Positions 921 to 48,489 of a stretch of DNA of 64,000 bases are shown here, piece after piece. Under the pieces are notes generated by a model. It had not been told where the DNA came from, did not search any database, and was given only the letters and a program-made list of their open reading frames with translations. Position 1 is the stretch's first letter. Each line of letters starts with the position of its first letter. The position numbers and the translations under genes were made by a program. Location of the stretch: IMG/VR virus record IMGVR_UViG_3300046694_000296, positions 151,657-215,656 of that record; one strand, given 5' to 3'.

Positions 921-1559
921 ATGCTGCAATCGGCCCAATCGACTATCAATACCCGCACCTCGACCCGCTACGAGGACCACACCGGCATGCTGCACAAACT
1001 CGCAAAGCGCGGCTGGGGCCGATTGCAGGAGGCAGGGCTCGACGTGACCTACGAGGACGTCTACCAGCATATGTGCGAGAGCTTCGTGAAGTGCCAGTCC
1101 ACCTACAAGGTCGACACCGGCTTCTCGTTCTCGGCGTATTACGGTCGCTCGATCTGGAACAACTTCAACCACTGGGCCGAGCGCCAGATCGAGGAGAAGC
1201 ATACGCTTGGCCTCGTCTCGGTCGAGAGCCTGTGCGGCAGCGACGACGAAGGCGAAACCGACGTGTTCGAATTCATCGAGCAAGAGGACGACGAAGAGAC
1301 GCCTGAAGACCGGCTCGCCGCGCGTCAGGAGTCGCACCGGCTTGCCCGCATGCTCTCGGACGATGCCAAGCGCATGGTCGCGCTGCTCGCGCACCAGACC
1401 CCGGCGCTCGAACAGTGGATGGACGAGCGCAACGCGCGCATGTTGAAAAAGACCTACCAAATCAACCTGTGGCTCATTGGCGAGTTCCTGGGTTTCGAGC
1501 GCAAGAAGGTGAGTCGCCTGCGCCTGGAGCTGGAGCGCGTCTACGGCGTGGAGCTGTGA
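921..1559 (+). CDS. sigma70-like transcription factor
   Basis: Region-2-like segment (YEDVYQHMCESFVKC...FSFSAYYGRSIWN) and C-terminal HTH-like segment (LWLIGEFLGFERKKVSRLR); ATG at 921. Confidence 0.55.
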   Translation: MLQSAQSTINTRTSTRYEDHTGMLHKLAKRGWGRLQEAGLDVTYEDVYQHMCESFVKCQSTYKVDTGFSFSAYYGRSIWNNFNHWAERQIEEKHTLGLVSVESLCGSDDEGETDVFEFIEQEDDEETPEDRLAARQESHRLARMLSDDAKRMVALLAHQTPALEQWMDERNARMLKKTYQINLWLIGEFLGFERKKVSRLRLELERVYGVEL

Positions 1560-30216: not shown

Positions 30217-31035
30217 ATGAAGTGTCCTCACTGTGGTTCCGAGGGTCGAATTCACGTCCAAGTGTCTTTGAGTGCACCCGGAAGCATGTATCGACAGTTC
30301 TCCAAGCAGAATTTGCGGAGCAAAGAGGTCCACCTCCAAGGTGTTCTTTGGGAAACGACGGACTTTATCTGCGAGAGCAAGGACTGCGGTCGCGTCACCA
30401 ACGGATACGGCAACTACGTCTCGAAGCTCAAGGAGCGGGTCGACGAGCTGGAAGCGCAGCTGGCCGCGCTCGCCGCCTACGCCACCGCCGCCAACCCGAT
30501 GACCGAGGAGGGCGACCGGGTGGCAAACGGCCGCTCACGACTGCGCGAAGCGTATTGCAAGCAGCAGCCGCTTCCGGTGCCCGACCAGATGGCGCTGGTG
30601 TTCCGCGCGGACCTTATGCGCGTCGAGAACCAGAACATGCAATACGCCACGCATCGTCGATTCCTGATGGAGCGCGAGGATGCGATCAAGCACGCGATCG
30701 GCGACTACTACATGGCGCTCGACCTGCGCGCGCACGGCAGCGTCGCGGCCGGCGACGCCCTCGCCAAGATCCAGAACGTGCTCGGCATGCGCTGGAAGCA
30801 GAACGAAGAACTCACGCGCCGCCTCGGTGAAGCCGCGCAGACTGCCGCAGTGCCGCCCATGCTCGAAGGCACGTGGCTCATCACGCAGGGCAACGGCCGC
30901 CAATACACGGTGCACAGCAGCGCCAAAGCGAACATCGCGCGTGACTGCGGTTACACGGTCGAAGAGATCCGTCGCGACGCCGAGAGCGCACCGGGACAAT
31001 CGAATCAATGCATCACCACGGGGAACCAAGCATGA
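30217..31035 (+). CDS. hypothetical mosaic protein with N-terminal zinc ribbon
   Basis: CPHC...CESKDC; 5' part lower GC than 3' part. Confidence 0.55.
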   Translation: MKCPHCGSEGRIHVQVSLSAPGSMYRQFSKQNLRSKEVHLQGVLWETTDFICESKDCGRVTNGYGNYVSKLKERVDELEAQLAALAAYATAANPMTEEGDRVANGRSRLREAYCKQQPLPVPDQMALVFRADLMRVENQNMQYATHRRFLMEREDAIKHAIGDYYMALDLRAHGSVAAGDALAKIQNVLGMRWKQNEELTRRLGEAAQTAAVPPMLEGTWLITQGNGRQYTVHSSAKANIARDCGYTVEEIRRDAESAPGQSNQCITTGNQA

Positions 31036-31577
31036 AAACGCAGCAGCAAAGCGCCTTCGACGCGCTCAAGAAGCAGCTCCACGACGACGAGGATATGGCG
31101 TGGGCCTGGCACTGCAACATCGCGATGGCCGTCTACGACACTACGCAGCCGGCGGTCGATCACCACAACAAGCACCGCTTCGCCAACGAGGGGGCCGCGC
31201 GCACGCTGAGCCGTCTGTTCGACGTGGATATGACGAAGCATCCGCATTGGGAGGATATGAAGGCGGGCTGGGCGATCCTCGACCAGCAGCGCGCCGCCCT
31301 TCGCGCGCCGGAAGAGGGCGAGGTGTGGCTGCACCGCAAGGGTGACCGCTACACGGTGATCGGCACGACCGACGCGCCCGATGCCGGGAAGGCCGACAAG
31401 TTCCCGCGCGTGGTGTTCTACCGCGGCCCGGACGGTCGGAAGTGGTCGCGCCCGCTCTTGAGCTTCCTCGAGTCCTTCACGCTGGTGCCGGTGGAAACGC
31501 AACCCGGCTCGCCCAACTTCGACGGCGCAGAAGCCTACGAAGCGCATCTGCGCGCCACCGCGGGAGCGCAGGCATGA
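31032..31577 (+). CDS. hypothetical protein with DUF1653-like C-terminal domain
   Basis: WLHRKGDRYTVIG...VVFYRGPDGRKWSRPL..F. Confidence 0.6.
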   Translation: MKTQQQSAFDALKKQLHDDEDMAWAWHCNIAMAVYDTTQPAVDHHNKHRFANEGAARTLSRLFDVDMTKHPHWEDMKAGWAILDQQRAALRAPEEGEVWLHRKGDRYTVIGTTDAPDAGKADKFPRVVFYRGPDGRKWSRPLLSFLESFTLVPVETQPGSPNFDGAEAYEAHLRATAGAQA

Positions 31578-32613: not shown

Positions 32614-33159
32614 ATGATGACGTTGCAGCAGTTCTATCTGACGAAGATCGCGGAAGAGGCGGCGGAAGTCGCCAAGATCGCGTTGAAGGCGCAGCAATTC
32701 GGGTTGACCGAGGTTCAACCCGGGCGCGAAGCGAGCAATGCCGAGCGCATGTATGCGGAGCTCAATGACCTGAACGCGATGGTGCTGGAACTCAACCGCG
32801 TCGGCTTCGGGCAGTTCTACTACCAAGCCAATCACGCGGCGATGTCCGTGAAGATGCAGAAATGCGAGAAGTATCTCGGCTACTCACGCTCGCTGGGCCT
32901 GGTCGAGCAGCCGCAGCCGGTATCGCTCGAATACGTCGAAGGCATGATGGAGTCGATGAACATGGAGCTCGCGGTCGAGACGTCCCTGCGCGAAGAAGTG
33001 ACGTTCAACGGCCACACCGCCGTCGTCGAGCAACGCTATGACAGCCAGGAGCGCCGCTACGGCCAGTGGATCATCGACGGGCTGGAGATGGACTACTACA
33101 AGGCGGTCGTCGCGCTGATGAAGCCGAAGGTGGTGCACACCGAGCAGGTGGCGGCGTGA
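32614..33159 (+). CDS. small MazG-like domain protein
   Basis: LTKIAEEAAEVAK.ALK..FG...AELNDL. Confidence 0.55.
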   Translation: MMTLQQFYLTKIAEEAAEVAKIALKAQQFGLTEVQPGREASNAERMYAELNDLNAMVLELNRVGFGQFYYQANHAAMSVKMQKCEKYLGYSRSLGLVEQPQPVSLEYVEGMMESMNMELAVETSLREEVTFNGHTAVVEQRYDSQERRYGQWIIDGLEMDYYKAVVALMKPKVVHTEQVAA

Positions 33160-33565
33160 GCGACGGCGAGGCATTGCGGCGCGAATTGAAGGCGGGCGAT
33201 CAAATCATCGCGACGGATATCGCCTTTTTCAGACACGCGCCGGATAAGCAATCGCAGCACATTGGCGATCTGCTGATGGTCAACAACCCGCGTATCGGCG
33301 ACGCTGTTGGCGGTGTGTCGCTGAACAACCGGCCGGGCGAGTCGAGCCGAATCGGGCTAGGCAGCTCGCTGGTGGTCGGCAAGTTTCGTCGAGCAACACC
33401 CGACGACCCCGGCTACTTGGCAACCCGCGAGCAGTGGTTCGCCATCAAGAACTTGGAGATCGAGAAGCTGCAAGCTCGGCTATGGGCGAAGGGAGTGGAT
33501 TTTTGGGCCGTTCTCTCAGTCGCAGTTTTGCTGGCTGTTTGTCTGGTCACGAAAGGCAGTGTCCA

Positions 33566-33916
33566 ATGAGACTCCTAATCTGCGGCGGCCGAGACTTTGA
33601 GAACCTGCCGTGGGCATTCGAGAAGCTCGATGCGTTCCGGCGGGCCAATGCGGTCACGGTGGTGATCCACGGTGATGCGCGAGGTGCCGACACCATCGGG
33701 GGAAAATGGGCTGACACGCGCGGGATACCGGTCGAAAAGTATCCCGCCGACTGGGCCCGCCTCCGCAACGCAGCGGGGCCGGCTCGCAACGCGCAGATGC
33801 TCCGCGAGGGCAAGCCCGATCACGTGTTCGTGCTGCCGGGAGGACGGGGCACTGCGAACATGGTCATTCAGGCAAAGGAGGCGGGCGTGCCGATTACGTT
33901 CGCGAAGGGATTATGA
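33566..33916 (+). CDS. SLOG-family (YspA/DUF2493-like) protein
   Basis: LLICGGRDF, VIHGDARGAD, AGPARN.QM, PGGRGTANM. Confidence 0.85.
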   Translation: MRLLICGGRDFENLPWAFEKLDAFRRANAVTVVIHGDARGADTIGGKWADTRGIPVEKYPADWARLRNAAGPARNAQMLREGKPDHVFVLPGGRGTANMVIQAKEAGVPITFAKGL

Positions 33917-34089
33917 GCCTCAAGCACGAGAACGATCCAGTGATGAACATCATCGCGCCGGAGGACATTCCGACCGAGTGCGTGCACAACGGATGCGGCG
34001 CGCGCACGACGCTCATCGAAACACACGCCAACTACACGCACGAGGAATGCGTCATGTGCGGGCAGCAGTATCACGTCTATCAGGACTGA
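33913..34089 (+). CDS. small zinc-ribbon protein (below ORF-track cutoff)
   Basis: MSLKHENDP...CVHNGC...CVMC; ATGA-coupled. Confidence 0.5.
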   Translation: MSLKHENDPVMNIIAPEDIPTECVHNGCGARTTLIETHANYTHEECVMCGQQYHVYQD

Positions 34090-34092
34090 ACC

Positions 34093-34578
34093 ATGAGCAA
34101 GGACAAGACCGCCTACGTGAGCCGCGAAGGGCATCGACTCCAGAGGGTCGAGTGGCAACGCCTGCGTGCCGACAACGCCTACCGCACGGTTCGGGCGTTC
34201 GAGAACGACACGATTGGCGTGACCGCCGAGTGGGTGGGTATCGGCCAGAATCCGCAGACCGTGCCGCCCCAGCACTGGAAGCTCTACCGCCTGACGGTCG
34301 AGAACATCGTGCGCGCCGACGCAGAAGGGAATCCGCTGCCGGTGCCGCGCCGCACGGTCGATCCAAGCCTCACGCGCGACTTTCGCACCGAGCAGGAAGC
34401 GATCGACGCCTACGAAGACGCACTGGTGCGTTTCGGTGGTTGTGAGTGGTTGCCCGCGCCCGACGGCGCGACTGGCCCGCTCTTTGTCGAGCACGGCAAC
34501 AAGTTGCAGGTGGGCGAAAGCAAGATCGACGTGCGCGAGCTGGCCGATGACGTCGCGGACCTCGCCGGGAGCTGGTGA
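34093..34578 (+). CDS. hypothetical protein ending ...DLAGSW
   Basis: First gene of a four-gene coupled run. Confidence 0.65.
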   Translation: MSKDKTAYVSREGHRLQRVEWQRLRADNAYRTVRAFENDTIGVTAEWVGIGQNPQTVPPQHWKLYRLTVENIVRADAEGNPLPVPRRTVDPSLTRDFRTEQEAIDAYEDALVRFGGCEWLPAPDGATGPLFVEHGNKLQVGESKIDVRELADDVADLAGSW

Positions 34579-34826
34579 TGACGGAATGCGATGAAGTCGC
34601 CGAAGGGATGCGCGACGATTTTCTCGGCTGGATTCGCGCCGAAGAGCGCGAGTTGTCGCACTACGCGGCGCGCAGATTCGTGACCGCGCAGATGCCCGAC
34701 GAGACACCGACGATCCGCGATGACGTGTCCTTGAGCCTCTTCGCCATCGCGCGGGTGCATGTGCACGACCACACGATGCGCCAGAAGATCGCTGAGATGG
34801 ACAGTCCGATGGCCGGGAGTTGGTGA
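34578..34826 (+). CDS. small paralog 1 ending ...SPMAGSW
   Basis: TGATG coupling; F..W / AAR.FV similarity to the next two genes. Confidence 0.65.
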   Translation: MTECDEVAEGMRDDFLGWIRAEERELSHYAARRFVTAQMPDETPTIRDDVSLSLFAIARVHVHDHTMRQKIAEMDSPMAGSW

Positions 34827-35086
34827 TGGCACGGGATCGCAGCGGGGAAGCCCGGCGGTGGGTGCCGTCGTTCGCACAGTGGCTCGTCGAGAACAAGATG
34901 GAGCTCGATGGGTATGCCGCCTACATCTATGCGCGCAAGGTCGTCGTGCCGGATAGCGGCCGTCAATACCAGAAAGAGATCGGCGTGGCACTGCTCAAGC
35001 TGGCGCAGCAGGAATACGAAGTCGAGGCTCAGAAGCGAGAGCGCGACGAGGAGATGGCGAGCAACCCATTGGCCGGGAGTTGGTGA
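34826..35086 (+). CDS. small paralog 2 ending ...NPLAGSW
   Basis: TGATG coupling. Confidence 0.65.
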   Translation: MARDRSGEARRWVPSFAQWLVENKMELDGYAAYIYARKVVVPDSGRQYQKEIGVALLKLAQQEYEVEAQKRERDEEMASNPLAGSW

Positions 35087-35355
35087 TGGCAGAAGCCTCA
35101 AGAATCACTGCCGCGAACATGCTTCATGATTTCATGCGCTGGCTCGCGAAGGAAGGCTATGTGGTGGACGCCCTCGCGGCGCGCGAGTTCGTTGCCAAGC
35201 GACTACCGCACCAGTCCATCGACTATCGCATGAGCGTCGTCCACAAGCTGCTCGAACTGGCGGAACGGGAAGCGAAGAAGGCGCGCGAGCAGCACGAGGC
35301 ATCGCCGCCTCAAGATGAAGATTCAGCCGGCAGCCCATTGGCGGGTAGCTGGTAA
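35086..35355 (+). CDS. small paralog 3 ending ...SPLAGSW
   Basis: TGATG coupling; followed by terminator. Confidence 0.65.
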   Translation: MAEASRITAANMLHDFMRWLAKEGYVVDALAAREFVAKRLPHQSIDYRMSVVHKLLELAEREAKKAREQHEASPPQDEDSAGSPLAGSW

Positions 35356-35381: not shown

Positions 35382-35410
35382 CAGGGGCGCCTTTGGGCGC
35401 CTCTTTTTTT
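35382..35410 (+). terminator. intrinsic terminator
   Basis: AGGGGCGCC-TTTG-GGCGCCTCT then T7. Confidence 0.8.
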
Positions 35411-35668
35411 GCCTCCAGCGCGCAGCCAAGCCTCGCGTGCTATTCGCGCGCCCGCACGCATTCCCTGTTAGCAAAAACGCATCCGAGATGCGAGTGCCGG
35501 GGCCAAAGACCCGTCTTTAAAGTCTCTCTTGTCGCGACGCACTAAGCGACGCGAGACAGGGAAGGGCAAAACGGTCCAGCACCATGCGATACGCGCCTTC
35601 TCCCGGTCGTGAAAATTGAAACCAGCGCGAACACAGCGCAAACCAATCTCACTCAGGAGAAATACGCC

Positions 35669-36721
35669 ATGTCCAAGAAAGCCAACGCCTCGAAGAAGTC
35701 CCTCGTCGTCAACATGATCGGTGCCGCCGAAGCCGCACCGATGGACGCTGATCTCGCAGCGCTCCTGAACGTGCTCGAAGTGCCGGGCGCTGCCGACGCA
35801 AGCGCGCCGACCATCGAGGTGATCGAGCAAGCCAATGCGCCGGTCATCGAAGCCGGGGGCGACATCATCGAGTCCGCTGATGTCGAAACGCTCGACCTGT
35901 CCGAGTCGCTTGCTGCGCTCGAAGACAGCGCGCCGATCATTGCGCTGCCTGAGCTGCTGCCCGAGACGCCTGCGGTGATCGAAATCCCCGCCGAAGTCCT
36001 CGCGGGTGGTGAATCCGCTGAGCTCGACGCGGTGCTCGCCAGCATCGAGGTGCAAAACAGCTACGCCGCAGCGCCCACGGGTGACGTCGATCCGACGATC
36101 GAAGCCGCGACCGAACAAGAAGTCGCAGCCGCCACCGAAGAGCTGCCCGCGGTCGCCGCAGAGCCGGACGAAGAAGCGGGTGCCGCAGCGGGCGCTGCGC
36201 CTGCGAAGACCCGCACGCCGCGCGTGCACTACGCCAACAAGACCGATCGCATCAAAGCGCGCCTCGGTGCGAAGTTGGGCGACTACCTCGTCCTCGAACT
36301 CGCAGACGCCGAGCTCGACGGTGACGCCTTGAAAGCGAAGCAGGACGAGACGCTTGCGGTTATCGACGCGATGTCCGTGAAGGTGAAGAACCGCGCGAGC
36401 CTGCTGCTCGACTGGTTGTCGGGCAAGACCGCGCAGCCGAACGAGATCCTCAAGCGCGCGCTTACCGTTCTGCACGCCGACGGGAAGATCACGACCGGCG
36501 ACAACGGGAACCTCCACAAGAACCTGATCGCGAAGCCGTATTCGACGAGCGCTGCCCGCGCGATGGGCCGCAACACAATCACGGTCATGGAGAAGTGCAA
36601 GATGATCGTCGCCAGCGGGACCAAGGGCGAATACGTGCCGAACGAGAACTCGCTCTTCCTCGGTTTCGCAAACGAGATGATGGGCTTCGCCGCAGCGCCC
36701 GAAGAAGCGTCGGCAGCGTAA
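35669..36721 (+). CDS. protein with very acidic N-terminal half and possible winged-helix C-terminus
   Basis: CAGGAG RBS; E/D/A-rich N-terminal ~170 aa; C-terminus resembles 48597..49268. Confidence 0.7.
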   Translation: MSKKANASKKSLVVNMIGAAEAAPMDADLAALLNVLEVPGAADASAPTIEVIEQANAPVIEAGGDIIESADVETLDLSESLAALEDSAPIIALPELLPETPAVIEIPAEVLAGGESAELDAVLASIEVQNSYAAAPTGDVDPTIEAATEQEVAAATEELPAVAAEPDEEAGAAAGAAPAKTRTPRVHYANKTDRIKARLGAKLGDYLVLELADAELDGDALKAKQDETLAVIDAMSVKVKNRASLLLDWLSGKTAQPNEILKRALTVLHADGKITTGDNGNLHKNLIAKPYSTSAARAMGRNTITVMEKCKMIVASGTKGEYVPNENSLFLGFANEMMGFAAAPEEASAA

Positions 36722-37009
36722 GCGCGAGGGAAGCGGGCTTCGGCCCGCTTCGTCGGCCGGGCACCGCGCCTTGGAGATTGCGGGCCGGGCCCGGGATTTC
36801 GACCCATGCGCAGGTATTCCCGCGTCTATCGACGGGCAGGCAGACGCGCGGCACACGCGCAACATTTTGCGCACATACCGCAACAAATTTCTTACGAAGA
36901 TGCAACGCATCCGTGGCGGGTGGCTATACTGGACAGTAACCGCTAACTTACTAAACGCCAATGATCGGTGCGCAGAATAAGCACATCGCAACCACAACGA
37001 GAAACGACC

Positions 37010-37555
37010 ATGTTTCCGAGCAGCACGAACGACGTCCCGTATGCCTACGCCTTCGCACGCGAGTCCACGCCGGGCTACGCCTTCGTCGAGATCCAGCTGC
37101 GCCGCCTGGTGAAGAACTCCAGCGGCTACCAGCAAAACATCGACCTGATCGTCCGCACGTCCGTCAATCGCGAGTGGGACTACACCTACGCCACGAAGTT
37201 CGCGATGGCCGAGCAGCACGGCCCGGTGGAGATGCAGGAATTGAGCGACACGATGAAGGTGATGACGGCGATCGCCAAGAAGCTCAAGAAGATGGAGCTC
37301 GAGCTCGGCTACGTGAACGACTCCAACTTCCCCGAGTTCGCGCGCCGCGTGCTGGTCGCATCCGGCATCCGCACGGTGTTCGCCGAGCGCTCGTTCAATC
37401 AGGGCGCGCGGAACCGCGACGGTGATCTGCTCGCGGACGGGATTTTCGGCCTGCCGCAGCTCGATCCGAAGCAGGGCGCACGCTTCCTCGACGTGATCGG
37501 TGGTCTGGTGAAGGACACGCTTGAGAAGCGCGGCAAGCAGAAGGAGGTCGCATGA
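37010..37555 (+). CDS. hypothetical protein, first gene of small-gene array
   Basis: Downstream of TATACT and palindrome at 36925-36948. Confidence 0.6.
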   Translation: MFPSSTNDVPYAYAFARESTPGYAFVEIQLRRLVKNSSGYQQNIDLIVRTSVNREWDYTYATKFAMAEQHGPVEMQELSDTMKVMTAIAKKLKKMELELGYVNDSNFPEFARRVLVASGIRTVFAERSFNQGARNRDGDLLADGIFGLPQLDPKQGARFLDVIGGLVKDTLEKRGKQKEVA

Positions 37556-40500
37556 CCACTGCCGCGACGCAGGTCCAAATGTATTACGCCGCAGAGCGCC
37601 GCTCTGCTGAAGTCAACCTGACCTTCCTCGATCTGGTGAAGGACGGGATGACGTGCGAGGAGCTCGCCCGCAACATCGAACGCCGCCCGAGCCTCTGGCA
37701 GCGCTTCGAGCACTGGGTTCCGCACCTGCCGTCGAAGGTGACGGCATGACCGTCAACGAGTGCATCCGAGTGATGCAAGCGCTCAAGGATCAGGGGCACG
37801 GCCGCAAGCAGATCGTGCTGACCGACTGGCAAGTCAATTCGTCCATCGACACGATCCAGCTGAGCGAAGGCAAGCGCCAGCGCGTGCTGGTGTCGTTCGA
37901 CTACGGCGACCTCGATGGGGAGGACGCATGAAGCTCACCTGCAATCAGATGATCCTCCTGCTCGCGCTCTATCGCGGCTCGGTCATCGCGCACGTCGCCA
38001 CGGGCACGAAGGAGGCCGACTTCAATCGCCTTCGTGAGCTCGGCTATGTCGATGGGCTGGACTGCATCACGCGCGCCGGTGATGAGCGCGTGGTCAAGGC
38101 GCTCGCAGGTGTCGGGGTGGCCGCATGAGCACCCTCACTGTTCGCCTCTATCAATCTGGCGCTGACCGCGAAGAGGCGGTGCGCGCCGGTGTCGCGGGTG
38201 AGTTCGACGCGCTCGTGCGGCGTTACAAAGACGCCTCGATTCCGGTCCACGTGCTCGTCGGGTTCAAGCCGACCGCGCCGTATTCGAGCGACTACCACAC
38301 GGGCGGCCGACAGGGCGCGCTCCTGCGGGAAATGTGCCGTCACGCGAACGGGGTGGCCGCATGAGCATCGCTTTCTGCGACAAGCCGCTCGCCGCCGAAG
38401 GCTACACGAGCTATCGCTACAAGGGCCGCTTCGGCTGGATCATGATCGGCGCGCACGACACGGACGACGCGCTGCGTGAAGCTCGCCGCAGCACCGACGA
38501 TCCGGTGACGGTCGCCGGGCTTCAAATCTGGAATGGCAACGAATACACGGAGGTAACAGCATGACCCGCCCCTACAACGTCATCAACATCAACGGCTACA
38601 TCGTGCCCGCCACGTTTCACGACGCGCTCAAGAAGATCCTCGTCGCCATCAAGGAAGGGCGCGTCAAGGCCAAAGCAGCGCGCCGCTATGTCAAGCAGGT
38701 CAACCTCGCAGGCGACACCTGCATGTGCGCCATCGGCGCGCTGCTGACGCGGGAACAGTTGGCTGAAATCCTCGATGAGGGAATGAACGGCAAGGGGCTT
38801 TCCCGCCTTGCGACTTGGTTCGGCGCGCGCAACATCGAGGCGATGACGGCCATGACGTCGTGGGATTCCGGCTGGTTGCAGGCAAATTTTGACAGCTACG
38901 CCGAAGACGACGCGATGCCTGCCTTCGAGGTGCGCCTACTCCGCTACATGGATGAGAAGCCCAACTACCCGAACCCCGCCATCGAACACACCGGCGCGTG
39001 GCACTTCCCGGTGAGCCTGACGGCATAAGCACGCCCGACGAAATGTGGAAGTGTCAGGACGGTCGCCTCATCGCAGTCGGCGACATGACCGAGGCCCACG
39101 CCAAGAACGTGCTGCGCATGATCCTGCGCAATAACCGCCAGCGCCGCGCGTTGCAAGCCGATCTCGATCGCCTCGAAGTCTCGCTACGCGAGATGGTGGA
39201 AGAGCATCGCAAGTGGGGCAGCGATTGAATCCAGCCGGGCGCCACAGCCCGGTCGGGAGAATTCACACATCGACAACGCGCACAGGGAGCGCACAGCATG
39301 AAATGGTTGATCCTCAAAGAGCCCATCGCTGCCGAGCTGGGCACGCCGCCTGACTCCATCGGGCACGGGCGCGTGAAGCCTGCCCATCGTCCGGTGATCG
39401 ACGCGATCAACGCCGAAGCGCGCGAGCAGTTCCTCGCCGAATACACGGTCCTGTGGCCGTATGAGTTCCAGCTCCTCGATGACGACGGTGCCGTCTACTT
39501 CGAGGGCAAGTGCGGCGACATCGCGCTCGCGCCGGCCGACGAAGCATTCGCGCCGCTCGACTGGGCCAAGAACGACTCGGGCTGCACGGAGCTGCGCTAC
39601 CGCAAGGTGGGCGCCGACAAATGGGAGACGCTATGACCGTCCTCTACGAAGCGGTGCGCGAATTCCTCGAACGGGCCAAGGGCGACGATCTAGTCGATGC
39701 GCTCACAGACCTGCGCGACGCCTACGTGAACACGACCGTCGCCGACGGTGGGCTGATCGAAGCCGCACGCGACCGTTACGCGCTCGGGAGCAGCGACAAC
39801 ATCGAAATCGACGACGGCGCGCTGACGTCCATCGGCGACGAGGGCACATGGGTGCAGGCGTGGGTCTGGATGGAACACGAGGACGACGAAGACGACTGCG
39901 GCTGCCCGCTCGGTTTGCTGAAAGGTGAGACGTGTGGCGTTTGCGGGAAGACCACCTGATGCGCCTCATCTTCTTCCCGAAGTCGTTGCCTAATCCGTTC
40001 ACCATCGCGCTGTCAGGCATGACCGTCGATGATTTCGGCAATCAGATCCACCTGGAGGGCAACGCGCAGTGGTTCGCCGCCGCGAACTTCAGCGACGAAA
40101 ACTACTTCGACGCATCGACCGGCTTCGGCCCGCTCGGTTGGCGCGAAGCCATGAATAAGTAAGGGGTTACTCATGCACCTGACAGCAAGAGAGCGTCGCC
40201 TCATGAAAGCGGCACCCACCCTGAGCACGACGCAGCGCGTGTCCATCGCCCGTCATTGGCCCAAGTCGCGCGGGCAAGCGGCGACGGTCCTGTCTGCTGA
40301 GCATGTGGCGCGCGATGCGAACTACCCGGACATCGACCAGACCGGCAAGGGCCAGTTCAAGGGCAAGTGCAATCGCACGGCGTGCGAAGAGCGGGGCGAG
40401 GACATCGCATGGTGGAACCGCCCGATGCGGGCCTTCTACTGCTCGGACTGCCGCCGCGAGATCAGCCGCTTCGACGACTACCGCGGCACGCCGCAGCAGA

Positions 40501-43500
40501 TCTTCGAAAACGCTCCGCGCGTCGATGCTGATACGCCAGCACCGCATCCCGAAAATGAATCTGTCGCAACCAACCACGCAACCGCACCATGAGCCTGAAC
40601 ATAGAACGCCTCGAACTGCTCGCCGCCGCGCTTGAGCAGCAGAAATTCGCCGCGCCCGCCGAATTCGATCTGTCCTACTGGATCAGGAACAACGGCGATC
40701 ACCTCGCTCTCCGCAACCGCGAGAACGCCACTGTCGTCGCCGACAAAGAGTTCGGCAGCGCCGAGTGCGTGGTCGTCGATCCAGCCCGCGTCGATTGCAG
40801 CGCTGCCGCATGTGCGTGCGGGCATGCCGCACTCATGCCTGAATTCCACGCGCTCGGGTTCAAGCTGGTCGTGCCTGTCTCGGGTGTTTTCGCCGGCTCT
40901 GCGCAGCCATTCTTCGACGGGCATCTCGGATGGGACGCCGTGCGCCTGTTCTTCGGGCTCCAGAGTGAGTGGGCCGACTACTTGTTCGATATCGACTCCT
41001 ACGTCGACGAAGACGACGATGAGCCGCCGACGGCCGCAGACGTTGCCTTGCGCATTCGCAATCTGGCCCACGACGAGCGCCTGTCGCACCAGATGGGCCT
41101 GTCGGGCGCGCAGTAATCCGATCGTCATCCGTCATGCGACCGGGAAACTGGTCGTATCGCAACCACACACGGGGAAGCCCCATGCCGAAGCACCAAATGA
41201 CCGAGAGCGTCATCATCCGTCCCGCCAGCACGCGCTACGGTGGGCAAGACGCCGACTTCTCGATGTTCGACTATATCCAGAACGAATTCGAGAGCGACAA
41301 GATCCACGCGGTTCTCACGCACGTTCCGTATGACATCAGCGCGAAGATGCAGCGCCTCGAAAACGACCGCGCCGCGCTGCTCGACACTGCCGCGCTGGTG
41401 ATCGCCTCGTGGGAGGAGGGCGACTTGGCCGGCGCCGTTCGCGCGCTCGAACGTGCCGTCAAAGAGGTCCAGTCATGAGCGGCCGCCACCTTGTCGCCGC
41501 CGCGCTCGACGACGCCAACGACGAGAAGCACCACGGGGAAGCCTACACAGTGCACCTGTGGCTGCGCTCGGGTCGCGAGGTGCGCGGAGCGGTCGAGCGC
41601 GGAATGATGCGCCCGTTCAACGGCGGGCTGCTGCTGGAGCTGGAGGTGTGGAGGCAGCCGCTCCACAACGGCTACCCGCGCGGCGGTGAGCCGCCCATCC
41701 CGACAGGTCATCGCGTCCTCATCGACCCCGACGAGGTGGAGCAGATCGAGATCGTCTGGTGATCCGCGACCCGTTCAAGGGCTGCTCGCCGCGCTACGCC
41801 GCCTACTGCATCGCGCATGGGCTCACGCCGGCGGGCACGCAGCCCACGTCGCGGCATATCCGCCCGTTCGTCTACTGGATCGGGCATCACCTGGACATCT
41901 GGTGCAAGGCGCACGGCAAGCGCCGCCATACCCTCGGGTTCGTCGAGCACAGAGCGTTTGACGAATGGATCGCGCAGAAATACCCGCGACCCATCCGCAA
42001 GGGCTCCACACCCTGACCGGGAAACTAACACCTGTCGCAACCAACCACACACGACAACGCATCATGCCCATCCGATACGAAGAAATCATCGCCACCGTCG
42101 ACACGTCCGAACACAAGCTCGATCCGGGCAGCCTCGCAGTCGAAGCGCCTGCGACCCTCGACAACCTGTATCTCGACGCCTATGGGCTCGTGATCGACGC
42201 TTTCCACCAGCACGTCGTCTGCGCTGAGTCCGTCTCGATGGTCTACGCCGCCGCGAAGGTCATGTTCGCGCGCCACGGTGACACCAACCCGGTCCTGACG
42301 TTCGACCTTGCGACCGCCGCTGCAATGGGCTCGCCGTGGGAACACCAGTGCAAGAGCGCCGAAGAGTGGGCCGTGTGCTTCGCGCGTCGTCACGTCGAAA
42401 CCGACGAGGGCACGGTCGATGACGATGCCGTCGATGCCGATTGTGTCAGCCGTGCTTTCTACGCGCTGAGCGTGCTCATCGGTGCCGGTGTGCCCCGCAC
42501 CGATGCGGCGCTCGCGCAGCTGTGCCACGACAACGAGACACTGATCGCCTCGCTCAACGCGACGCCCGCCTAACACATGCCCGGGCCGCGCGCCCGGGCG
42601 CAACTTGGAGAAGAACATGACCAGCAACGTTCGAACCTTCCAGGTGGATCTCGTGCCCGTGATTTCGACCTGCCACGTCAGCAAAGATACCGCCGCGCGC
42701 CTCGATCTGGGCGACCGCGAAAACGACTGGACGATCACCGCCGCGTATGAGCACGGCTGGCTCCTCTACGTGCAGCCGGAAGAATTGATCGCCGACCTCG
42801 GGATGCCTGAAGACCTCGCGACGGTGATGGCATGGGGCCGCCGGCACAAGGTTCAGTGGATTCGCATGGACTGCGACGCGGGTGCCGTGCACGACCTGCC
42901 GCAATACGACTGGTGACGCATCCTCGGGCGGGCCACAACCCGCTCGGGAGAATAGAACCATCGAAACCAACGCGAGACACGCGATGAAGACCCCGACCAC
43001 CCTGCCGATCAAGAACCTGTCCGACTTCTACGCCAACACGCGCAACAAGCCGTGCGTGTTTGACGATCAGTGCTTCCTGTTTCTCGCGTCCGGTTTCGCG
43101 AACTACGCCGTCGTGCACGACGCCAAGACCGAGCAGTTCGTCGCGCTTGAACAGCGCACGTTCGGTTCCGCAGACGTCGAGACGGTCTGGGAGATTGCCC
43201 GTTCTGAGCCGCGCGGGAACATCGACCCGTGCAACGCCGCGTGCATGCGCGGTCTGTATTTCGACTGCAACAACCACCTCGACGCCGAGACGCACGTCGC
43301 GCCGAAGTTCATCGCCGATTAAGAGATCCACCATGAATATCGCCAACATCGCCCATGCGCGCCACACGCTCGAAGTGATCCGCGTCAAAGCGCTTGCCAA
43401 CGAGTTCTCGGGCGCGGGCCGCTACCACGACAAGAACACGGGCTGCCTGTGCGTGATCGGGTCCATCATGCCGCCGAGCATGCTCGAAGTCGCCGCACGC

Positions 43501-46500
43501 GAGCACAACGGTTGTCCGATCGACGGGTTCTACGTCCGCAGACACGGTGCTGAGGGGCTGGAGCTCGCCTCCGACGCGCTCGCACGCGAAACCGGGATTC
43601 CTTCGGGCATGCTCGCGTCGCTCCAGATCGAGCACGACGAGGTATCGCACCAGTTCGGCCCGGGTCCGGGCACCCGCGCGGTCGCCAACAAACGTATCGC
43701 CAAATGGGCGACGACGACACTCTCCACGCTCTTCTGAACGCCATGAACATCGAACAACTCCGACTCGCCCGCCGCACGCTCGAACAGATCCGGGTGCGGG
43801 CACTCCACAACGAATTCTCGGGCAAGCCGCGCTACCGAGACTTGAACGGCTGCCTGTGTGCGGTCGGCGCACTGATGCCCGACTTCGTGCTCGACAAGAT
43901 CGCGGACAGCAAGAACAACGAGTCGAGCATCGGCGGGCTCGTATTCACGCCGCCGGGCGATTCGCCGTATCGCCGGGTCCGTGTGATCCAGGTGATCGTG
44001 GAAGAGACGGGGCTGGGCCGCTGGGACATCAAGGATCTCCAGCAGACGCACGATAACGTGCCGCACTCTCAGTTCCGCGAGAGCGAAACATGGACCGCAG
44101 ACGAACGTCGCGCACGGGCCAACGAGCGTGTCCGTAAGTGGGCCGAGAGCCGGCTGGAACAACTGTTTTAACGGGGGCAGTGCGAAGGACCAAAACGGGT
44201 GCCGATAGCGGGCAAAAGACCCGCGTCGAATCCGTTTTAACAGCCCGAATCCTGGCGGGCCAAACACCGGGCAACGCACCATAGGAGGCGCGCCATGAAG
44301 GGACGCTAATCCACCACGAAACCACACATCTACACGCCAATAAGGCCCGGGTTACGCACTGTAATACCGGGCCTTATTTCATGGTCCGACAGCCTGTTAC
44401 GCCGAGGAACACTAAGTCATTGATAGTAAACAAGAATGTTGTATTTCCGTAACTTGCTCGTTTACGCAGTCAATTCGCTGCCAATGCAGACCGCCCTGAA
44501 GAGGCTCGACCCGCAATTGAGACACGGCAGAAGCGTGCCGAACCACCAGCAATACCGAGACAACCTGCAACGCAAACGAAGCGAATGCCGAGCGATCTGA
44601 CACGCCCGAGACGATCATCCAGACCAGCAGCGATCCCGCAATCGCCCGACCGGTAAGCGAATAGGATAAGAATCGTGCTTTTGACCGCAACGACGAATCC
44701 GAGGAGATCAACACTCACACACCGGATCGCGGAGACTCAATCACCCGTATGGACCCATTCATATAGCACTCATCCATACATAGAGAGAACACACTCCACA
44801 CGCCTTTACGTATAAGAACTCCTGGTGGCTGGGCCTGATCGTTCTCTTTCAATCGTCGCCCTCCAGCAATTTCTTATACCGCGCCGCCAACCCATAGCCG
44901 CACTCACACATGCCAATTACCGCCAATGCCAAGCTGGGTAAGGGATTGCGGGCTTTCGAATCCGTGGACTCGGTGCCGTGGAATGGGGATGGCGAGAGGC
45001 CCGTATAGGCGCGTTCCTATAAGATCCGAGGCCCGCCGTATAAGTTCTTCCTATAAGAGTCTCCTATAAGGTTCGCCACGGCCCTATAAGTTTGGCCCCG
45101 CCTACCTATAAGTTTGGCATGCCGTGGCACGTGCGTGTGTGGAAAGACGATCTCTTCCTATAAGGTTCCAAGCCTTCGTCTCGATACTGGTGTCTCTCCC
45201 ACCACGAAGCGAGCAACGCAATGCAGATCAATCATCCGAACGTCGTCCCGTGCCAGGGCTACGGTTATGGTGCCGTGCAGAAGCCGACCGATGTGTATTC
45301 CTCGATGAGCGACAACTTCGTCTATCTCGGCGAGCGGGTCTTCAACTGCCATCCCTTCCGTGATGATGTGCAGGGTTGGCCGATTCGCTGGGAGATGAAC
45401 GAGCACGACCGCGCTGACCTGGCGTCGCACCGCGAGTTTCTTGCATCGCTCGGGTGATCCAATGACGGGCCAAGCGCCCGTCTCTCTTCATGGTGTGAAC
45501 GCCAAGGCACGCCGTGGAACGCCTTGGATTGCCGTGGCACCGGGAGAGTGAGAGGTCCGAGCCTCATCCGTGACCCGGGCGTCACAATGAAAGCTCACCA
45601 ACAACGAGGTTCACCATGAGCACGACCAACATCACCCCGGAACGCAAAGCAGAACTCTCGGCAAAGGGCTTCTACATCGAGGACATGAAAGCGGTGTGGG
45701 GCGAGGGCTGGTGGGACGGTTCGTTTCGCTGGATGAAGAAGGGCTCGGATGAGTTTCAGGACGGCGACGTGAGCAGCTTGGAAGAGAACGCATGGAAGGT
45801 GTGCGACGCATACGATCGCGAGACGAGCGTTGCCAAGCCCGGGCACTATCTCGTCTCGCGCGAGGTGGTCGGTTCGGAAGCCCGGGACAAGATGGTCGCT
45901 GGTCTGCGCGATGAGGAGTTCGACTTCACGATCACGGAGACGCAACCGGGGCACTTCACGGTCACGGTGCAGTCGCCCGAGGGCGTGTGTTGGGGCTGAT
46001 AGTGGTTGACGGGCCGAGCGCCCGTTGTTCGAACACACCGCCGTGGATCGCCAGGGCAGGGCGCATCAGATCCGCACACACCGGTTCGGGCGCCGCATGT
46101 CGATCGTCAAAATAGAGTCTCACCCACTCAGAGATTCACCGAAAACATGGTCACAGCCACCATCACGAAGTTCACCCCCGAAACCAACGTCGCCGTCGAG
46201 GGCAACCCGGGCGGGTATGCCGCGTTCGAATACAGCCTGTTCAACGACGACGACGTGAGCATCGTCGCCTCGATCACGGTCCCGATGTGCTACTTCCTCG
46301 ATGAGCACACCAACCTCGCGACGACCGCCTTCGCGTCGATGGTGACCGAGATCGTCAACACCGAGCCTGAAGACTACGCGAAGCTCGTGGGCCGCACCTT
46401 CGAGTAACCACCCGACGGGCCAGTGTGCCCGTTGTGCAGCTGCAGCGCCGTGGCAGCACTCTCACGCATCCTCATCGCCCTATGCGGGCGCCAATGCCTC

Positions 46501-47929
46501 GTCGGGAGACTGAAGTCTCTTACACAACGAGGTGCATCATGGTTGAACAGCTCCAGTGGTTTCTCGCCGTCTTGCTCGTGATCGCTGCCGCGGTCGGTAT
46601 CGGTGCGGTGTTCTGGTTCGCTATCGACGTCGCAACGGGCGGCATTCGTCGCGCACGGGAGCGCCGACGCTGTGCGATGCCCAATCGCATCGCAACCCTT
46701 ATGCGCGGGCGTTGAGCGACCTACCGGGACACTCCGTGTCCCGAGTTGCAAAAACGACACTCATGTAAGAGGGTGCCTACAAATAATTCGGTTGATATAG
46801 GCATACCAATGGCCGAGGAGCCGCACCGGACAAGGAATCGGAATTTGTTACTCGAAGTTACACCCTATTACACCTCTTTCATCCGCCAATCGTTTGGCGC
46901 ACAATTTCTACATGCACTGACCGGTGAACAAAACCTCTGTGCAGCCAAAAACCAGTAAATAATTCCTTCCCGAAGAGCACTACGGCAATGAGCAAGATCG
47001 CATTCGAATGCATGGACGCATCCAACAACACGTTCACGGTCAAGATGGAGTCGGACTCCGCGGAGATTGAGCAGGTGGTCGCCGCCACCGTGCAAGCCTA
47101 CAAGCGCGAGGGCATCGAAGTGTTCTCGGCAACCCGCATCGAGGAGATGGTGGTCGACGTCGATATGTATGCGCCGGCCGAGCGCCGGGCCGCAGTGCCG
47201 ACGGCTACGCTTGAGCGCCTGGCGGGCCGTAGCGGCTCATGGCTGCAGCGCGGGGCGGCGCTCGGTGCGCTAGTCCTCGCGATCCTTGGCTTCGATGCTG
47301 ATCTGTCGATGGTGGCGCGCGTCGCCCATATGGGCGGGGCCGTTATGACCGTCGTCCACGCGGCTGTCTGAATCCGCGGAAGCGAAATCCGTAGAGGGCG
47401 CTCTAAAGTGATGAGTCTCGTTGCTCGCACAGGTGCCCTCTCCAATGTTGTCATGGTTCAGTGAAGGAATGTGGATGATCCCCCTCTATGGGGTGGTGTT
47501 CATCCTGTTTGTGCTGGTGTTGTGCGTAGTGTCCGCGTTCTGCGATATGCGCGCACGGCACCGGTATGAAGCGAGCGTGCGCCGCTACTACGCACGCCGC
47601 CGTCTGTTCTAGTCGTGCCTCACCTGCGGTGCCCATGCGCACCGTCTTGGCCGGGCCGTGGCGGGGCAGGTGACGCGTCCAAGCGCGTGCCGTGAGGTAG
47701 TCGAGAGAATGACGTCTCTTGCAGCGAATGAGTCGCTGCACCACCTCTCAAGGAGACTGTCATGCTCGCCCGCCTCATCCACGTCGAAACGCTGCTTGCC
47801 GATAACGATCTCGATCGCGAGCTGGATGAGCTGGAACGAATGCAGGAGCAGGAAGAGCAGCGCGCCGCCCGGGCCACCCGCAGTGTGCGTCGCCGCTCGC
47901 ATGCGCAAGACTGGGCGCGGATCGACTAG
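37552..47929 (+). other. array of about 30 small co-oriented hypothetical genes (accessory/early region)
   Basis: Chains of ATGA-coupled ORFs of 55-175 aa (e.g. 38561..39028, 39298..39636, 40173..40592, 40589..41116, 42064..42573, 42617..42916, 43333..43737, 43743..44171, 45221..45457, 45616..45999, 46147..46407, 46988..47371, 47762..47929). Confidence 0.7.
45016..45164 (+). repeat. cluster of CCTATAAG direct repeats
   Basis: Perfect copies at 45016, 45050, 45063, 45083, 45105, 45157; variant CCGTATAAG at 45036. Confidence 0.9.
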
Positions 47930-47985
47930 AATTGCCGTAACAACGATTTACCTGAGTGGTCTTCGCCTAACACGCAAGATCTTTG

Positions 47986-48014
47986 ACGGCACCCGTTTGG
48001 GTGCCGTTTTTTTT
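47986..48014 (+). terminator. intrinsic terminator ending the small-gene array
   Basis: ACGGCACCC-GTTT-GGGTGCCGT then T-run. Confidence 0.85.
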
Positions 48015-48489
48015 CGTGTGGCCGATTTTGCCACGGCTCAAGGCCCGTATAGGCGACTAGGCTGAAAAGCGCTCACCGGCGTGCAGCGGGTTTGGTGCCG
48101 AGCCGCCCGGTGCCGCGGAATGGGGATGGCGACGGACCCGTATAGGCGGCTTGGACGAAAAGAGGGCGACGCCGGGCAGGGCGCCGGGCCAAGGGCCAGG
48201 GCCAAAACCGGGTGCCAAGACCCTTCGGGCCGCAGAAGATCAGGGCCACAGAGCATCGGGCCATGACGATGTTAGAGATGCGTAACAATATCGTTAGAGA
48301 TGCGATACATCGCACCGCGTAACACATTCGTTAGAACTACCAGATATCCCAGGGTGACGCATCGCGCGCCCGCCCCTCACATAAGAACAGAACGCGCACG
48401 CACGCGACTACCAGACGCGCCCGGGCGTCGTCAAGCGGTCCTCGTAAAAACAACGTCAACAAATCTCTAACTTTTTTTGCACAAACCTA

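What the first reader, a model, noticed from the sequence alone, without database searches (positions are those of the whole stretch)
35604..47710. Second promoter-like motif YCGGGA(G/A)A(A/C)T ahead of small accessory genes
Seen: CGGTCGTGAAAAT 35604, CGGTCGGGAGAAT 39250, CATCCCGAAAAT 40545, CGACCGGGAAACT 41137, TGACCGGGAAACT 42014, CGCTCGGGAGAAT 42941, GATCGCGGAGACT 44725, GCACCGGGAGAGT 45537, CTCGTCGGGAGACT 46498, TACCGGGACACT 46722, TAGTCGAGAGAAT 47698; most lie 30-65 nt before an ATG. It looks like a -10 box with G replacing the first T (GANANT). Inference: promoter class for the phage sigma-like protein (921..1559), giving each small gene its own promoter.
Basis: partly seen in the sequence, partly recalled or inferred. 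Interest (0 to 1): 0.6.

Follow-up and report, generated by a model that had tools for sequence, protein, structure and literature searches.

The report
Hairpin-promoter cassettes before phage accessory genes
The repeated motif is real: it is the core of a conserved, roughly 50-base promoter-like cassette that heads each small block of accessory genes in a Paraburkholderia-type phage-plasmid, but which sigma factor reads it is still untested.

Summary
Eight of the 11 listed sites (35604, 39250, 40545, 41137, 42014, 42941, 46498, 47698) belong to one family. Three do not (44725, 45537, 46722). Four were missed (30991, 46104, and the weaker 45179 and 45579).

The full element has fixed spacing. 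Taking the invariant T as -7 (my inferred numbering), it reads aTCC (-40..-37), gcGCCa (-30..-25), TCgg (-16..-13), G A n A A T (-12..-7), then C-1/A+1 and a TCGmAAC box. The ATG follows a median 33 nt after the T. The stretch -39..-12 is an imperfect inverted repeat with compensatory changes.

Six related ~105-kb genomes carry 55 such sites, all on the coding strand and concentrated in the variable accessory-gene region. More distant relatives lack the pattern, and sampled Burkholderiales genomes show only background density.

Best reading: a phage-specific promoter class with a -10 carrying G at -12 and no canonical -35, fused to a stem-loop. It resembles T4 PeSL cassettes, one per block of 1-14 genes.

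Assignment to the phage sigma-like protein (921-1559) is plausible but unproven. A host sigma plus a phage activator is the main rival. No transcription-start data could be obtained.

The parts
30963..31014 (+). Cassette promoter (10-mer at 30991, CCGGGACAAT). It heads the 14-gene block 31032-35355.
   Evidence: Matrix score 28.8 bits. Orthologous sites occur in genomes A, C and E.
35383..35411 (+). Strong intrinsic terminator (9-bp stem plus T7) that ends the 31032-35355 block.
35579..35630 (+). Weak variant promoter (10-mer at 35607, TCGTGAAAAT) before gene 35669-36721. It has the CGCC box at the right spacing but no TCC. A second conserved promoter-like block (GGCCA-N12-TAAAGT) lies about 100 nt upstream, near 35501-35523.
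   Evidence: Score 14.2 bits. The six-genome alignment of the intergenic region shows both blocks conserved. The site lies between a terminator and the gene.
39225..39276 (+). Cassette promoter (TCGGGAGAAT at 39253) with a hairpin predicted at -18.7 kcal/mol. It heads genes 39298-40592.
   Evidence: Score 37.8 bits. Hairpin. The same 37-nt block also occurs at a non-orthologous place in genome C.
40519..40570 (+). Cassette promoter, TCCCGA variant (10-mer at 40547), embedded in the 3' end of ORF 40203-40592. It heads gene 40589-41116 (phrog_889 family).
   Evidence: Score 16.6 bits. This gene family follows such a site at its other genomic places in C, D, E and F, but one second copy in B has none.
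41112..41163 (+). Cassette promoter (CCGGGAAACT at 41140). It heads genes 41182-42016.
   Evidence: Score 24.7 bits.
41989..42040 (+). Cassette promoter (CCGGGAAACT at 42017) overlapping the stop codon of 41759-42016. It heads genes 42064-42916.
   Evidence: Score 33.8 bits. Homology between genomes A and B begins exactly at this site.
42916..42967 (+). Cassette promoter (TCGGGAGAAT at 42944) with a hairpin predicted at -19.2 kcal/mol. It heads gene 42984-43322.
   Evidence: Score 35.0 bits. Hairpin.
45151..45202 (+). Weak member (TCTCGATACT at 45179) overlapped by the last copy of the iteron array. It precedes gene 45221-45457.
   Evidence: Score 12.9 bits. Iterons.
45551..45602 (+). Degenerate member (GCGTCACAAT at 45579) before gene 45616-45999. 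Relative to the orthologous sites in A and C, part of the spacer appears to be deleted.
   Evidence: Score 18.1 bits. Comparison with A87323 and C15198.
46076..46127 (+). Cassette promoter (TCGTCAAAAT at 46104) before gene 46147-46407.
   Evidence: Score 27.7 bits.
46474..46525 (+). Cassette promoter (TCGGGAGACT at 46502) before the 58-aa gene 46539-46715, whose N-terminus looks hydrophobic (by eye; no prediction run).
   Evidence: Score 27.9 bits. Orthologues in A and E.
47673..47724 (+). Cassette promoter (TCGAGAGAAT at 47701) before the 55-aa gene 47762-47929, which is followed by a terminator.
   Evidence: Score 29.8 bits. Terminator at 47985-48008.
47985..48016 (+). Strong intrinsic terminator (10-bp stem plus T8) that closes the promoter-bearing region.
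921..1559 (+). Divergent two-domain sigma-70-family protein (212 aa), the candidate reader of the motif. It lies in an operon with CobT-like and CbbQ-like genes and the Pol III alpha gene.
   Evidence: Pfam Sigma70_r2 E 6e-4. TIGR02937 E 3e-6 over residues 37-219. All listed Foldseek matches (down to rank 50) are sigma factors. Predicted fold is two helical domains joined by a disordered acidic linker.
46725..46743 (+).
   Evidence: Score -13.2 bits. Sequence.
44725..44737 (+).
   Evidence: Score -5.7 bits.
45537..45549 (+).
   Evidence: Score -18.1 bits.

Best explanation
Each site is a compact promoter cassette placed directly after the stop codon of the preceding gene.

Anatomy, with the invariant T numbered -7 (inferred):
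- an imperfect inverted repeat spanning about -39 to -12, flanked by a conserved TCC at -39..-37 and centred near a conserved gcGCCa box at -30..-25;
- an extended -10 region, T C g g G A n A A T (-16..-7);
- a preferred C-1/A+1 start followed by TCGmAAC;
- a leader of about 26 nt and then the ATG.

Inferred mechanism:
- RNA polymerase starts about 7 nt after the T and transcribes one cassette of 1-14 small accessory genes.
- Because -12 is G and there is no TTGACA-type -35, the host primary sigma alone should read these sites poorly. A phage-specified factor is therefore needed.
- The most likely factor is the divergent sigma encoded at 921-1559. Its operon has a promoter-like site with a consensus-type -10 (TAGACT), so it could be made first.
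- The stem-loop probably insulates neighbouring cassettes, as a leaky terminator or RNA 3' stabiliser, or tunes the promoter.
- The conserved cassette also offers homology for swapping accessory genes between related phages.

Shown: the motif, its architecture, strand bias, position, conservation, base-pair covariation and cassette organisation. Inferred: promoter function, the start point, the factor, and the role of the hairpin.
For: - Enrichment: the strict 10-mer occurs 6 times against 0.9 expected. The bipartite pattern TCC-N20-YCSSGANANT occurs 5-8 times per ~105-kb genome, always on the coding strand, with 0 hits for the reversed control, in G001, G002, G004 and G005. G006 has 3 such hits plus 1 on the other strand.
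- Matrix hits: 55 hits of at least 16 bits in six genomes, all on the forward strand. That includes 26 in three genomes not used to build the matrix.
- Background: 81 Burkholderiales genomes show about 0-17 hits per strand per 1-7 Mb, of the order of the control (somewhat above it in a few genomes).
- Logo: A at -11 in 55/55, T at -7 in 55/55, A at -9 in 54/55, G at -12 in 49/55.
- Positions outside the matrix, so unbiased by selection: C-1 in 38/55, A+1 in 33/55, A+7 in 49/55.
- The distance from the T to the ATG has a median of 33 nt.
- No sigma-70-consensus promoter is found in 30-49 kb, against 3.8 in shuffles. Strong terminators at 35383 and 47985 leave gene 35669 dependent on a promoter in its 260-nt upstream gap, where the site lies. 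The 47701 site, its gene and the terminator form a complete unit.
- Inverted repeat: mean folding energy -9.9 kcal/mol against -7.15 +/- 0.35 after column shuffling.
- Sites cluster in the variable region between core gene families and head shuffled gene blocks. Starts of homology blocks are about 3-fold enriched at sites.
- Sigma candidate. Its region 2.3 keeps the aromatic Y that stacks on the flipped -11 A in sigma-28 and sigma-70 (PMC12784957).
- G-12 A-11 n A-9 A-8 is the same core as the sigma-28 -10 element GCCGATAA (-15..-8), where G at -12 is read by a group-3-specific arginine (PMC12784957). A non-primary sigma reading G at -12 therefore has precedent.
- The motif is present only in genomes whose sigma is a close orthologue.
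Against:
- The co-occurrence of motif and sigma is confounded by phylogeny, because the other promoter-like motif fades in the same distant relatives.
- The conserved upstream boxes lie 12 bp and 24 bp from the -10 hexamer. Neither matches the 16-18 bp expected for a sigma domain-4 contact, which points to a separate DNA-binding activator.
- The CGCCA box at the same 12-bp spacing also precedes -10 hexamers with T at -12 (TAGACT, TAAAGT), including the promoter of the sigma operon itself.
- A relative with no sigma gene at the syntenic place (G011) has four promoters with the same +1 box and a TGCGAnCAT-type -10.
- The sigma assignment itself rests on sub-threshold family scores.
Confidence: 0.5

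Rival explanations
1. Activator-dependent 'middle-type' promoters. A host sigma (sigma-70, or possibly sigma-S or sigma-28) reads the weak -10 (A-11, T-7, G-14). A phage-encoded DNA-binding protein bound to the TCC and gcGCCa boxes replaces the -35 contact, as MotA/AsiA do at T4 middle promoters. The phage sigma would then serve other genes.
For: - The gcGCCa box is centred near -28, 12 bp from the -10 hexamer. From my own knowledge, that is the geometry of the T4 MotA box (about 12 +/- 1 bp).
- The same box and spacing occur with consensus-like -10 hexamers that carry T at -12.
- The sigma-less relative G011 has related promoters with a TG-type extended -10.
- TCC and GCC lie about 11 bp apart, like tandem sites on one face of the helix.
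Against: - G at -12 is held in 49/55 sites and T-16/C-15 in about 50/55. That implies a specific reader of -16..-12 different from sigma-70 regions 2.4 and 3.0.
- No activator candidate was identified.
- No MotA/AsiA-like sequence motif (TGCTT) is present.
Confidence: 0.27
2. An RNA-level element rather than a promoter. The hairpin plus the A-rich tail and the TCGmAAC box act within long polycistronic transcripts, as a processing or stabilising site, a leaky terminator, or a translational operator placed a fixed distance before each start codon.
For: - There is base-pair covariation in the stem.
- The element begins right after stop codons and ends a fixed ~33 nt before the ATG.
- Many leaders are CA-rich, and some lack a clear ribosome-binding site.
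Against: - The stems show no strand asymmetry and 91% Watson-Crick pairs, so nothing marks them as RNA-specific.
- 21 of 55 sites fold weakly (weaker than -8 kcal/mol), yet all 55 keep A-11 and T-7.
- The invariant A..AAT with a C/A start 7 nt later is the signature of a -10 element.
- Gene 35669 sits behind a strong terminator and needs a promoter.
- No Rfam family matches.
Confidence: 0.1
3. Primarily a recombination site. The conserved inverted repeats would be cassette-boundary sites for a site-specific recombinase, in the manner of integron attC sites, and the promoter resemblance would be incidental.
For: - The sites bound shuffled gene blocks, and homology blocks start at them.
- The same 37-nt block occurs at non-orthologous places.
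- The sites are hairpin-forming.
Against: - All sites share one orientation and a fixed distance to the downstream ATG.
- Ends of homology blocks are not enriched at sites (14 observed, about 10 expected).
- The invariant positions match a -10 element.
- By eye, no attC-type core (GTTRRRY) is present.
- Homologous recombination at a conserved promoter explains the shuffling without any recombinase.
Confidence: 0.05

Closest known systems
PeSL and PmSL elements of T4-like phages (promoter-early or promoter-middle stem-loops; PMC2839356, PMC4122927)
   Same: Both are composite cassettes of a stem-loop immediately upstream of a promoter, followed by a short leader and the start codon. Both repeat many times in hyperplastic regions full of small ORFan genes, and both are associated with gene insertions, deletions and replacements between close relatives.
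   Different: Here the promoter is not sigma-70-like: G at -12, no -35 hexamer, and its own upstream boxes. The stem-loop occupies the space where a -35 and spacer would be and reaches -12. The host and phage lineage are unrelated (an SSU5/nickie-like siphovirus-type phage-plasmid of a high-GC betaproteobacterium). Recombination at the sites is only weakly supported here.
T4 middle (MotA/AsiA-dependent) promoters (own knowledge; mentioned in PMC4122927)
   Same: A -10 element combined with a conserved box about 12 bp upstream, in place of a -35 hexamer.
   Different: The box sequence is gcGCCa, not TGCTT. There is a second box (TCC) one helical turn further upstream. The -10 has G at -12. No MotA or AsiA homologue was sought or found.
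Sigma-28 (FliA) -10 element GCCGATAA, positions -15..-8 (PMC12784957)
   Same: The core is identical: G-12, A-11, A-9, A-8. The TCCCGA variant also shares C-14 and C-13. In sigma-28, G at -12 is read by an arginine typical of non-primary sigmas.
   Different: T at -7 is invariant here but not conserved in sigma-28 promoters. The main form has G-14 G-13 rather than CC. No TCTAAAG-type -35 is present. The phage sigma has no domain 3 and matches FliA only weakly (E 0.65).
Phage-encoded sigma factors with their own promoter classes (SPO1 gp28 and gp33/34, T4 gp55, phiEco32 gp36; own knowledge, not checked here)
   Same: The logic is the same: a phage sigma made from an early, host-type promoter redirects host core polymerase to a phage-specific promoter class.
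   Different: The link between sigma and motif is not demonstrated here. The genes served are small accessory genes in a variable region, not a defined middle or late module.

Membership tests
Canonical sigma-70 (group 1) promoter | -35 hexamer TTGACA-like, 16-18 bp upstream of the -10 | tested here: not met
   No consensus-type promoter in 30-49 kb. Logo positions -35..-31 carry almost no information.
Canonical sigma-70 (group 1) promoter | -10 hexamer TATAAT with T-12, A-11 and T-7 | tested here: inconclusive
   A-11 is 55/55 and T-7 is 55/55, but position -12 is G in 49/55 and never T.
ECF (group 4) promoter | -35 GGAAC-like and -10 CGTC-like boxes, 16-17 bp apart (own knowledge) | tested here: not met
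   No AAC-type box. The conserved boxes are 12 and 24 bp from GAnAAT, or 20 bp between TCC and TCG.
Sigma-28 / FliA promoter | -10 GCCGATAA (-15..-8) plus -35 TCTAAAG (PMC12784957) | tested here: not met
   The -10 core is shared at -12, -11, -9 and -8, but no TAAAG-type -35 exists.
T4-type PeSL cassette | Stem-loop directly upstream of the promoter, then leader and start codon | tested here: met
   Inverted repeat -39..-12 with covariation. Fixed median of 33 nt to the ATG.
T4-type PeSL cassette | The promoter is a sigma-70-like early promoter | tested here: not met
T4-type PeSL cassette | Located in hyperplastic regions before ORFans, at indel or replacement boundaries | tested here: met
   Sites cluster between core families 53 and 56-59 among gene families present in 1-5 of 6 genomes. 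Downstream proteins have no known function. The boundary association is only modest.
Intrinsic terminator | GC-rich hairpin followed by a T-run | tested here: not met
   The terminator scan finds only 35383 and 47985 as strong + strand sites. The cassette hairpins are followed by GAnAAT, not a T-run.
Sigma-70 protein family (for the 921-1559 product) | Regions 2 and 4 recognisable by curated models at their cut-offs | tested here: inconclusive
   Sigma70_r2 scores 20 bits against a cut-off of 24. TIGR02937 scores 26.9 against 42.9 but spans both domains. All listed Foldseek matches (down to rank 50) are sigma factors at E 6e-3 to 4e-2.
Known RNA families (Rfam 15) | Match at the gathering threshold | tested here: not met
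   0 matches in the whole window.

The most novel reading that the evidence does not exclude
The inverted repeat is not just an insulator next to the promoter but part of promoter recognition. In this reading, a structured or extrudable DNA hairpin ending at -12, with a conserved loop box, is read by a host-core holoenzyme carrying the phage's minimal two-domain sigma. That would be a sigma-dependent counterpart of the hairpin promoters of phage N4. The whole 50-nt unit would also act as a mobile promoter module that drives turnover of ORFan genes in phage-plasmids.
Probability: 0.12. Interest if true: 0.75.

Novelty: new variant of a known kind. Interest (0 to 1): 0.45.

Why it matters
This would be a second, independent example, in an unrelated high-GC phage-plasmid lineage, of the stem-loop-plus-promoter cassettes that organise and shuffle accessory genes in T4-like phages. 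Here the promoter specificity is not that of sigma-70.

It gives a precise map of transcription units for about 17 kb of otherwise unannotatable ORFan genes. It also gives a well-defined DNA target (55 aligned sites) for working out what a very divergent phage sigma-like protein does. Finally, it offers a testable case of an upstream promoter box at a non-canonical 12-bp spacing.

The practical value is modest: better annotation of phage-plasmid regulation, and possible orthogonal promoter/sigma parts for Burkholderiales.

Tried and rejected
- Close phage records: megablast of 38-46 kb against GenBank phages found nothing, and tblastn of the sigma protein found nothing.
- Host assignment: the sigma profile found nothing in species-representative bacterial genomes. 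The Paraburkholderia contig that carries a homologue is not held for whole-record searches.
- Phylogenetic profile of sigma against motif: the motif occurs only where the sigma is a close orthologue. The other promoter-like motif fades in the same distant relatives, so I do not count this as a test of dependence.
- Co-varying motif in relatives with a ~29%-identical sigma (G007, G008): k-mer enrichment found only iteron-like repeats and a CACTATA-type motif, so no conclusion.
- Alternative register (TCGGGA as the -10, TCC as the -35, start right after AAT): rejected. It places the most invariant bases (A, A, A, T) in the discriminator and loses the C-1/A+1 signal.
- Sigma-54 (-24/-12) and sigma-32 consensus sequences: no resemblance by inspection.
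- Dimeric-protein palindrome instead of base pairing: rejected, because the inner stem sequences differ between sites while staying complementary.
- RNA-only structure: no strand asymmetry and no Rfam match.
- Integron attC-like sites: considered only by eye; no GTTRRRY core is seen and the orientation and ATG spacing argue against it.
Full report
CONTEXT

The window is the last 64 kb of a 215,656-bp IMG/VR virus record. That record is an assembly chimera.
- One exact 127-mer occurs at its start, its middle (108,903) and its end.
- The two halves are collinear genomes of 108.9 kb (A) and 106.6 kb (B), 71-88% identical.
- Genome B, which contains the window, also exists on its own as a 105-kb contig.

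The phage belongs to the SSU5 / nickie / RHEph10-like group of ~105-115-kb genomes, with large terminase about 60% identical. A homologous 109-kb contig in Paraburkholderia sp. RCC_158 carries TrfA, ParA, CobT, CbbQ, the sigma homologue and Pol III alpha. The element is therefore probably a phage-plasmid of Paraburkholderia-like hosts.

Four further near-complete relatives were fetched whole: G001, G004, G005 and G006, called C, D, E and F here. Together with A and B they give six genomes for comparison.

THE OBSERVATION

The strict 10-mer is enriched: 6 occurrences against 0.9 expected. Aligning its occurrences in A, B and C showed that it is the 3' end of a much longer conserved element with fixed spacing.

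A 38-nt matrix finds 55 sites of at least 16 bits in the six genomes, all on the coding strand. The best reverse-strand score anywhere is 12.6 bits. Of these sites, 26 lie in genomes D, E and F, which were not used to build the matrix, and they give the same logo.

In the window there are 10 sites of at least 16 bits and 3 at 12-16 bits, against 0.15 expected.

A simple bipartite pattern, TCC-N20-YCSSGANANT, gives these counts:
- 5-8 hits per genome on one strand and none for a reversed control in the close relatives; the exception is G006, with 3 hits plus 1 on the other strand.
- 0-1 hits in 13 more distant relatives.
- Background density in 81 Burkholderiales genomes.

ANATOMY

Numbering the invariant T as -7, the logo of 55 sites reads as follows:
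- A at -44, often the last base of the preceding stop codon.
- aTCC at -40..-37.
- gcGCCa at -30..-25, with the two Cs in 55/55 sites (these positions lie inside the matrix that selected the sites).
- T-16 (49/55) and C-15 (52/55), followed by g g.
- G-12 (49/55), A-11 (55/55), any base at -10, A-9 (54/55), A or C at -8 (44 and 11), T-7 (55/55).
- Outside the matrix, so unbiased: C-1 (38/55), A+1 (33/55), G+4 (35/55), A+7 (49/55). In most sites this is an ATCGmAAC box.

The start codon follows the T by a median of 33 nt.

The stretch -39..-12 is an imperfect inverted repeat.
- Mean predicted energy is -9.9 kcal/mol, against -7.15 +/- 0.35 when columns are shuffled among sites. Complementarity is therefore maintained within sites by different sequences, which is covariation.
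- Pairs are 91% Watson-Crick, with no difference between strands.
- The stem ends at -13..-11 in most sites.
- 34 of 55 sites fold at -8 kcal/mol or better.
- TCCCGA, the reverse complement of TCGGGA, is an accepted variant of positions -16..-11.

WHY A PROMOTER

- All sites point the same way as the genes and sit in the short gaps between genes, or overlap the end of the upstream gene, at a fixed distance from the next ATG.
- The two bases that all well-studied sigma-70-family -10 elements need, A-11 and T-7, are invariant. The pyrimidine/purine start preference appears exactly 7 nt downstream.
- The region 30-49 kb contains no sigma-70-consensus promoter at all, and the other abundant promoter-like motif stops at 36,924.
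- A strong terminator at 35,383 isolates gene 35,669, whose upstream gap contains a variant site conserved in all six genomes.
- The site at 47,701, its 55-codon gene and the terminator at 47,985 form a complete unit.

Each site heads 1-4 genes, except 30,991, which heads 14. All tested products are of unknown function.

WHICH FACTOR

The product of 921-1559 is a 212-residue protein with two helical domains joined by a disordered acidic linker. The evidence that it is a sigma factor is:
- sub-threshold matches to Sigma70_r2 and to the sigma-70/ECF superfamily model, the latter across both domains;
- JGI annotation of homologues as sigma-24 family;
- sigma factors as all of the listed Foldseek matches, down to rank 50.

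It keeps the region-2.3 tyrosine that stacks on the flipped -11 A, lacks the WW pair of primary sigmas, and has an arginine one residue away from the arginine that reads G-12 in sigma-28 (PMC12784957). The core of the motif, G-12 A-11 n A-9 A-8, equals the sigma-28 -10 core (PMC12784957). A non-primary sigma reading G at -12 is thus precedented.

The sigma gene lies in an operon preceded by a site with a consensus-type -10, TAGACT. A cascade from early promoter to sigma to cassette promoters is therefore coherent.

Four points weigh against a simple sigma model:
- The upstream boxes are 12 and 24 bp from the -10 hexamer, not 16-18 bp.
- The CGCCA box at 12 bp also accompanies -10 hexamers with T at -12.
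- G011, a relative lacking the sigma gene at the syntenic position, has four related promoters with the same +1 box.
- The restriction of the motif to genomes with close sigma orthologues is confounded by relatedness.

I therefore give about 0.8 to 'promoter', about 0.5 to 'promoter read through the phage sigma', and 0.27 to 'host sigma plus a phage activator on the upstream boxes', a T4-middle-like arrangement.

CASSETTES

Gene-family maps of the six genomes show that core genes are syntenic. The sites are concentrated in the variable stretch between core families 53 and 56-59 and head blocks that come and go between genomes.

One gene family (window 40,589-41,116) directly follows such a site at its places in C, D, E and F and at 40,547 in B; a second copy in B has none. 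A whole 37-nt promoter block recurs at a non-orthologous place in genome C.

Homology between genomes often starts at a site: 30 starts observed against about 9 expected, summed over six non-independent comparisons. Ends of homology blocks are not enriched.

This is the organisation described for PeSL elements of T4-like phages (PMC2839356, PMC4122927). The differences are the non-sigma-70 promoter and a stem-loop that lies inside, rather than upstream of, the promoter's upstream half.

LIMITS

There are no experimental data. Gene calls come from my own codon-bias caller. The matrix was trained partly on window sites. Hairpin energies use RNA parameters. The numbering, with T as -7, is an inference.

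Noticed in passing
whole record; window = record 151,657-215,656: The 215-kb 'direct terminal repeat' virus record is a chimera of two related ~107-kb genomes joined through one exact 127-mer present three times (record 1, 108,903 and 215,530). It is not a jumbo phage.
   Followed up: yes
window 5556-36924, + strand (for example 6807, 12016, 20569, 24895, 36924): A different and stronger promoter-like motif, GTAAGTnACGCGTTACTATACT, occurs about 13 times per genome, always intergenic. It lies before replication and nucleotide-metabolism genes. Its partly palindromic GTAAGT..GTTAC box also occurs downstream of the cassette -10 in genomes A and C, so it looks like a separable operator.
   Followed up: partly
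window 45012-45174: An array of eight iterons, (C/G)YTATAAG, lies in a 1-kb non-coding, lower-GC region (44171-45221). The last copy overlaps the weak promoter at 45179. Relatives encode TrfA and ParA, so this may be a plasmid origin or partition site.
   Followed up: partly
window 48044-48351: Further direct repeats (CCCGTATAGGCG twice, GTTAGAGATGCG twice, GCGTAACA...CGTTAGA twice) lie in the 670-nt non-coding gap after the terminator at 47985.
   Followed up: no
window 35501-35523 and 35594-35616: Gene 35669-36721 has two tandem promoter-like blocks conserved in six genomes. The distal one has a consensus-type -10 (TAAAGT here; TAGAAT or TAGACT in D, E and F) and the same CGCCA-type box 12 bp upstream.
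   Followed up: partly
window 36969-36993: A hybrid site lies before gene 37010: the first motif (CTATACT at 36924), then a degenerate cassette -10 (TGCGCAGAAT) and a perfect ATCGCAACC box. In genomes A and E the orthologous gene has a full cassette promoter instead.
   Followed up: partly
record 140,328 (genome B 31,426; outside the window): One strong site (TCCCGAAAAT, 17-31 bits) is conserved in all six genomes inside or at the end of a core gene, far from the accessory region. It may be an internal promoter.
   Followed up: no
window 2145-5549: DNA polymerase III alpha (PHP, NTPase, finger and HhH domains) is fused to a C-terminal uracil-DNA glycosylase-superfamily domain.
   Followed up: no
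genome G011 (IMGVR provirus, 109 kb), loci L144-L149: This relative lacks the sigma gene between the CbbQ-like gene and the next gene. Its dominant intergenic motif is a palindromic GTCAGTCR-N4-TGAC box, and it has four TGCGAnCAT-N6-ATCGACAAC promoters.
   Followed up: partly
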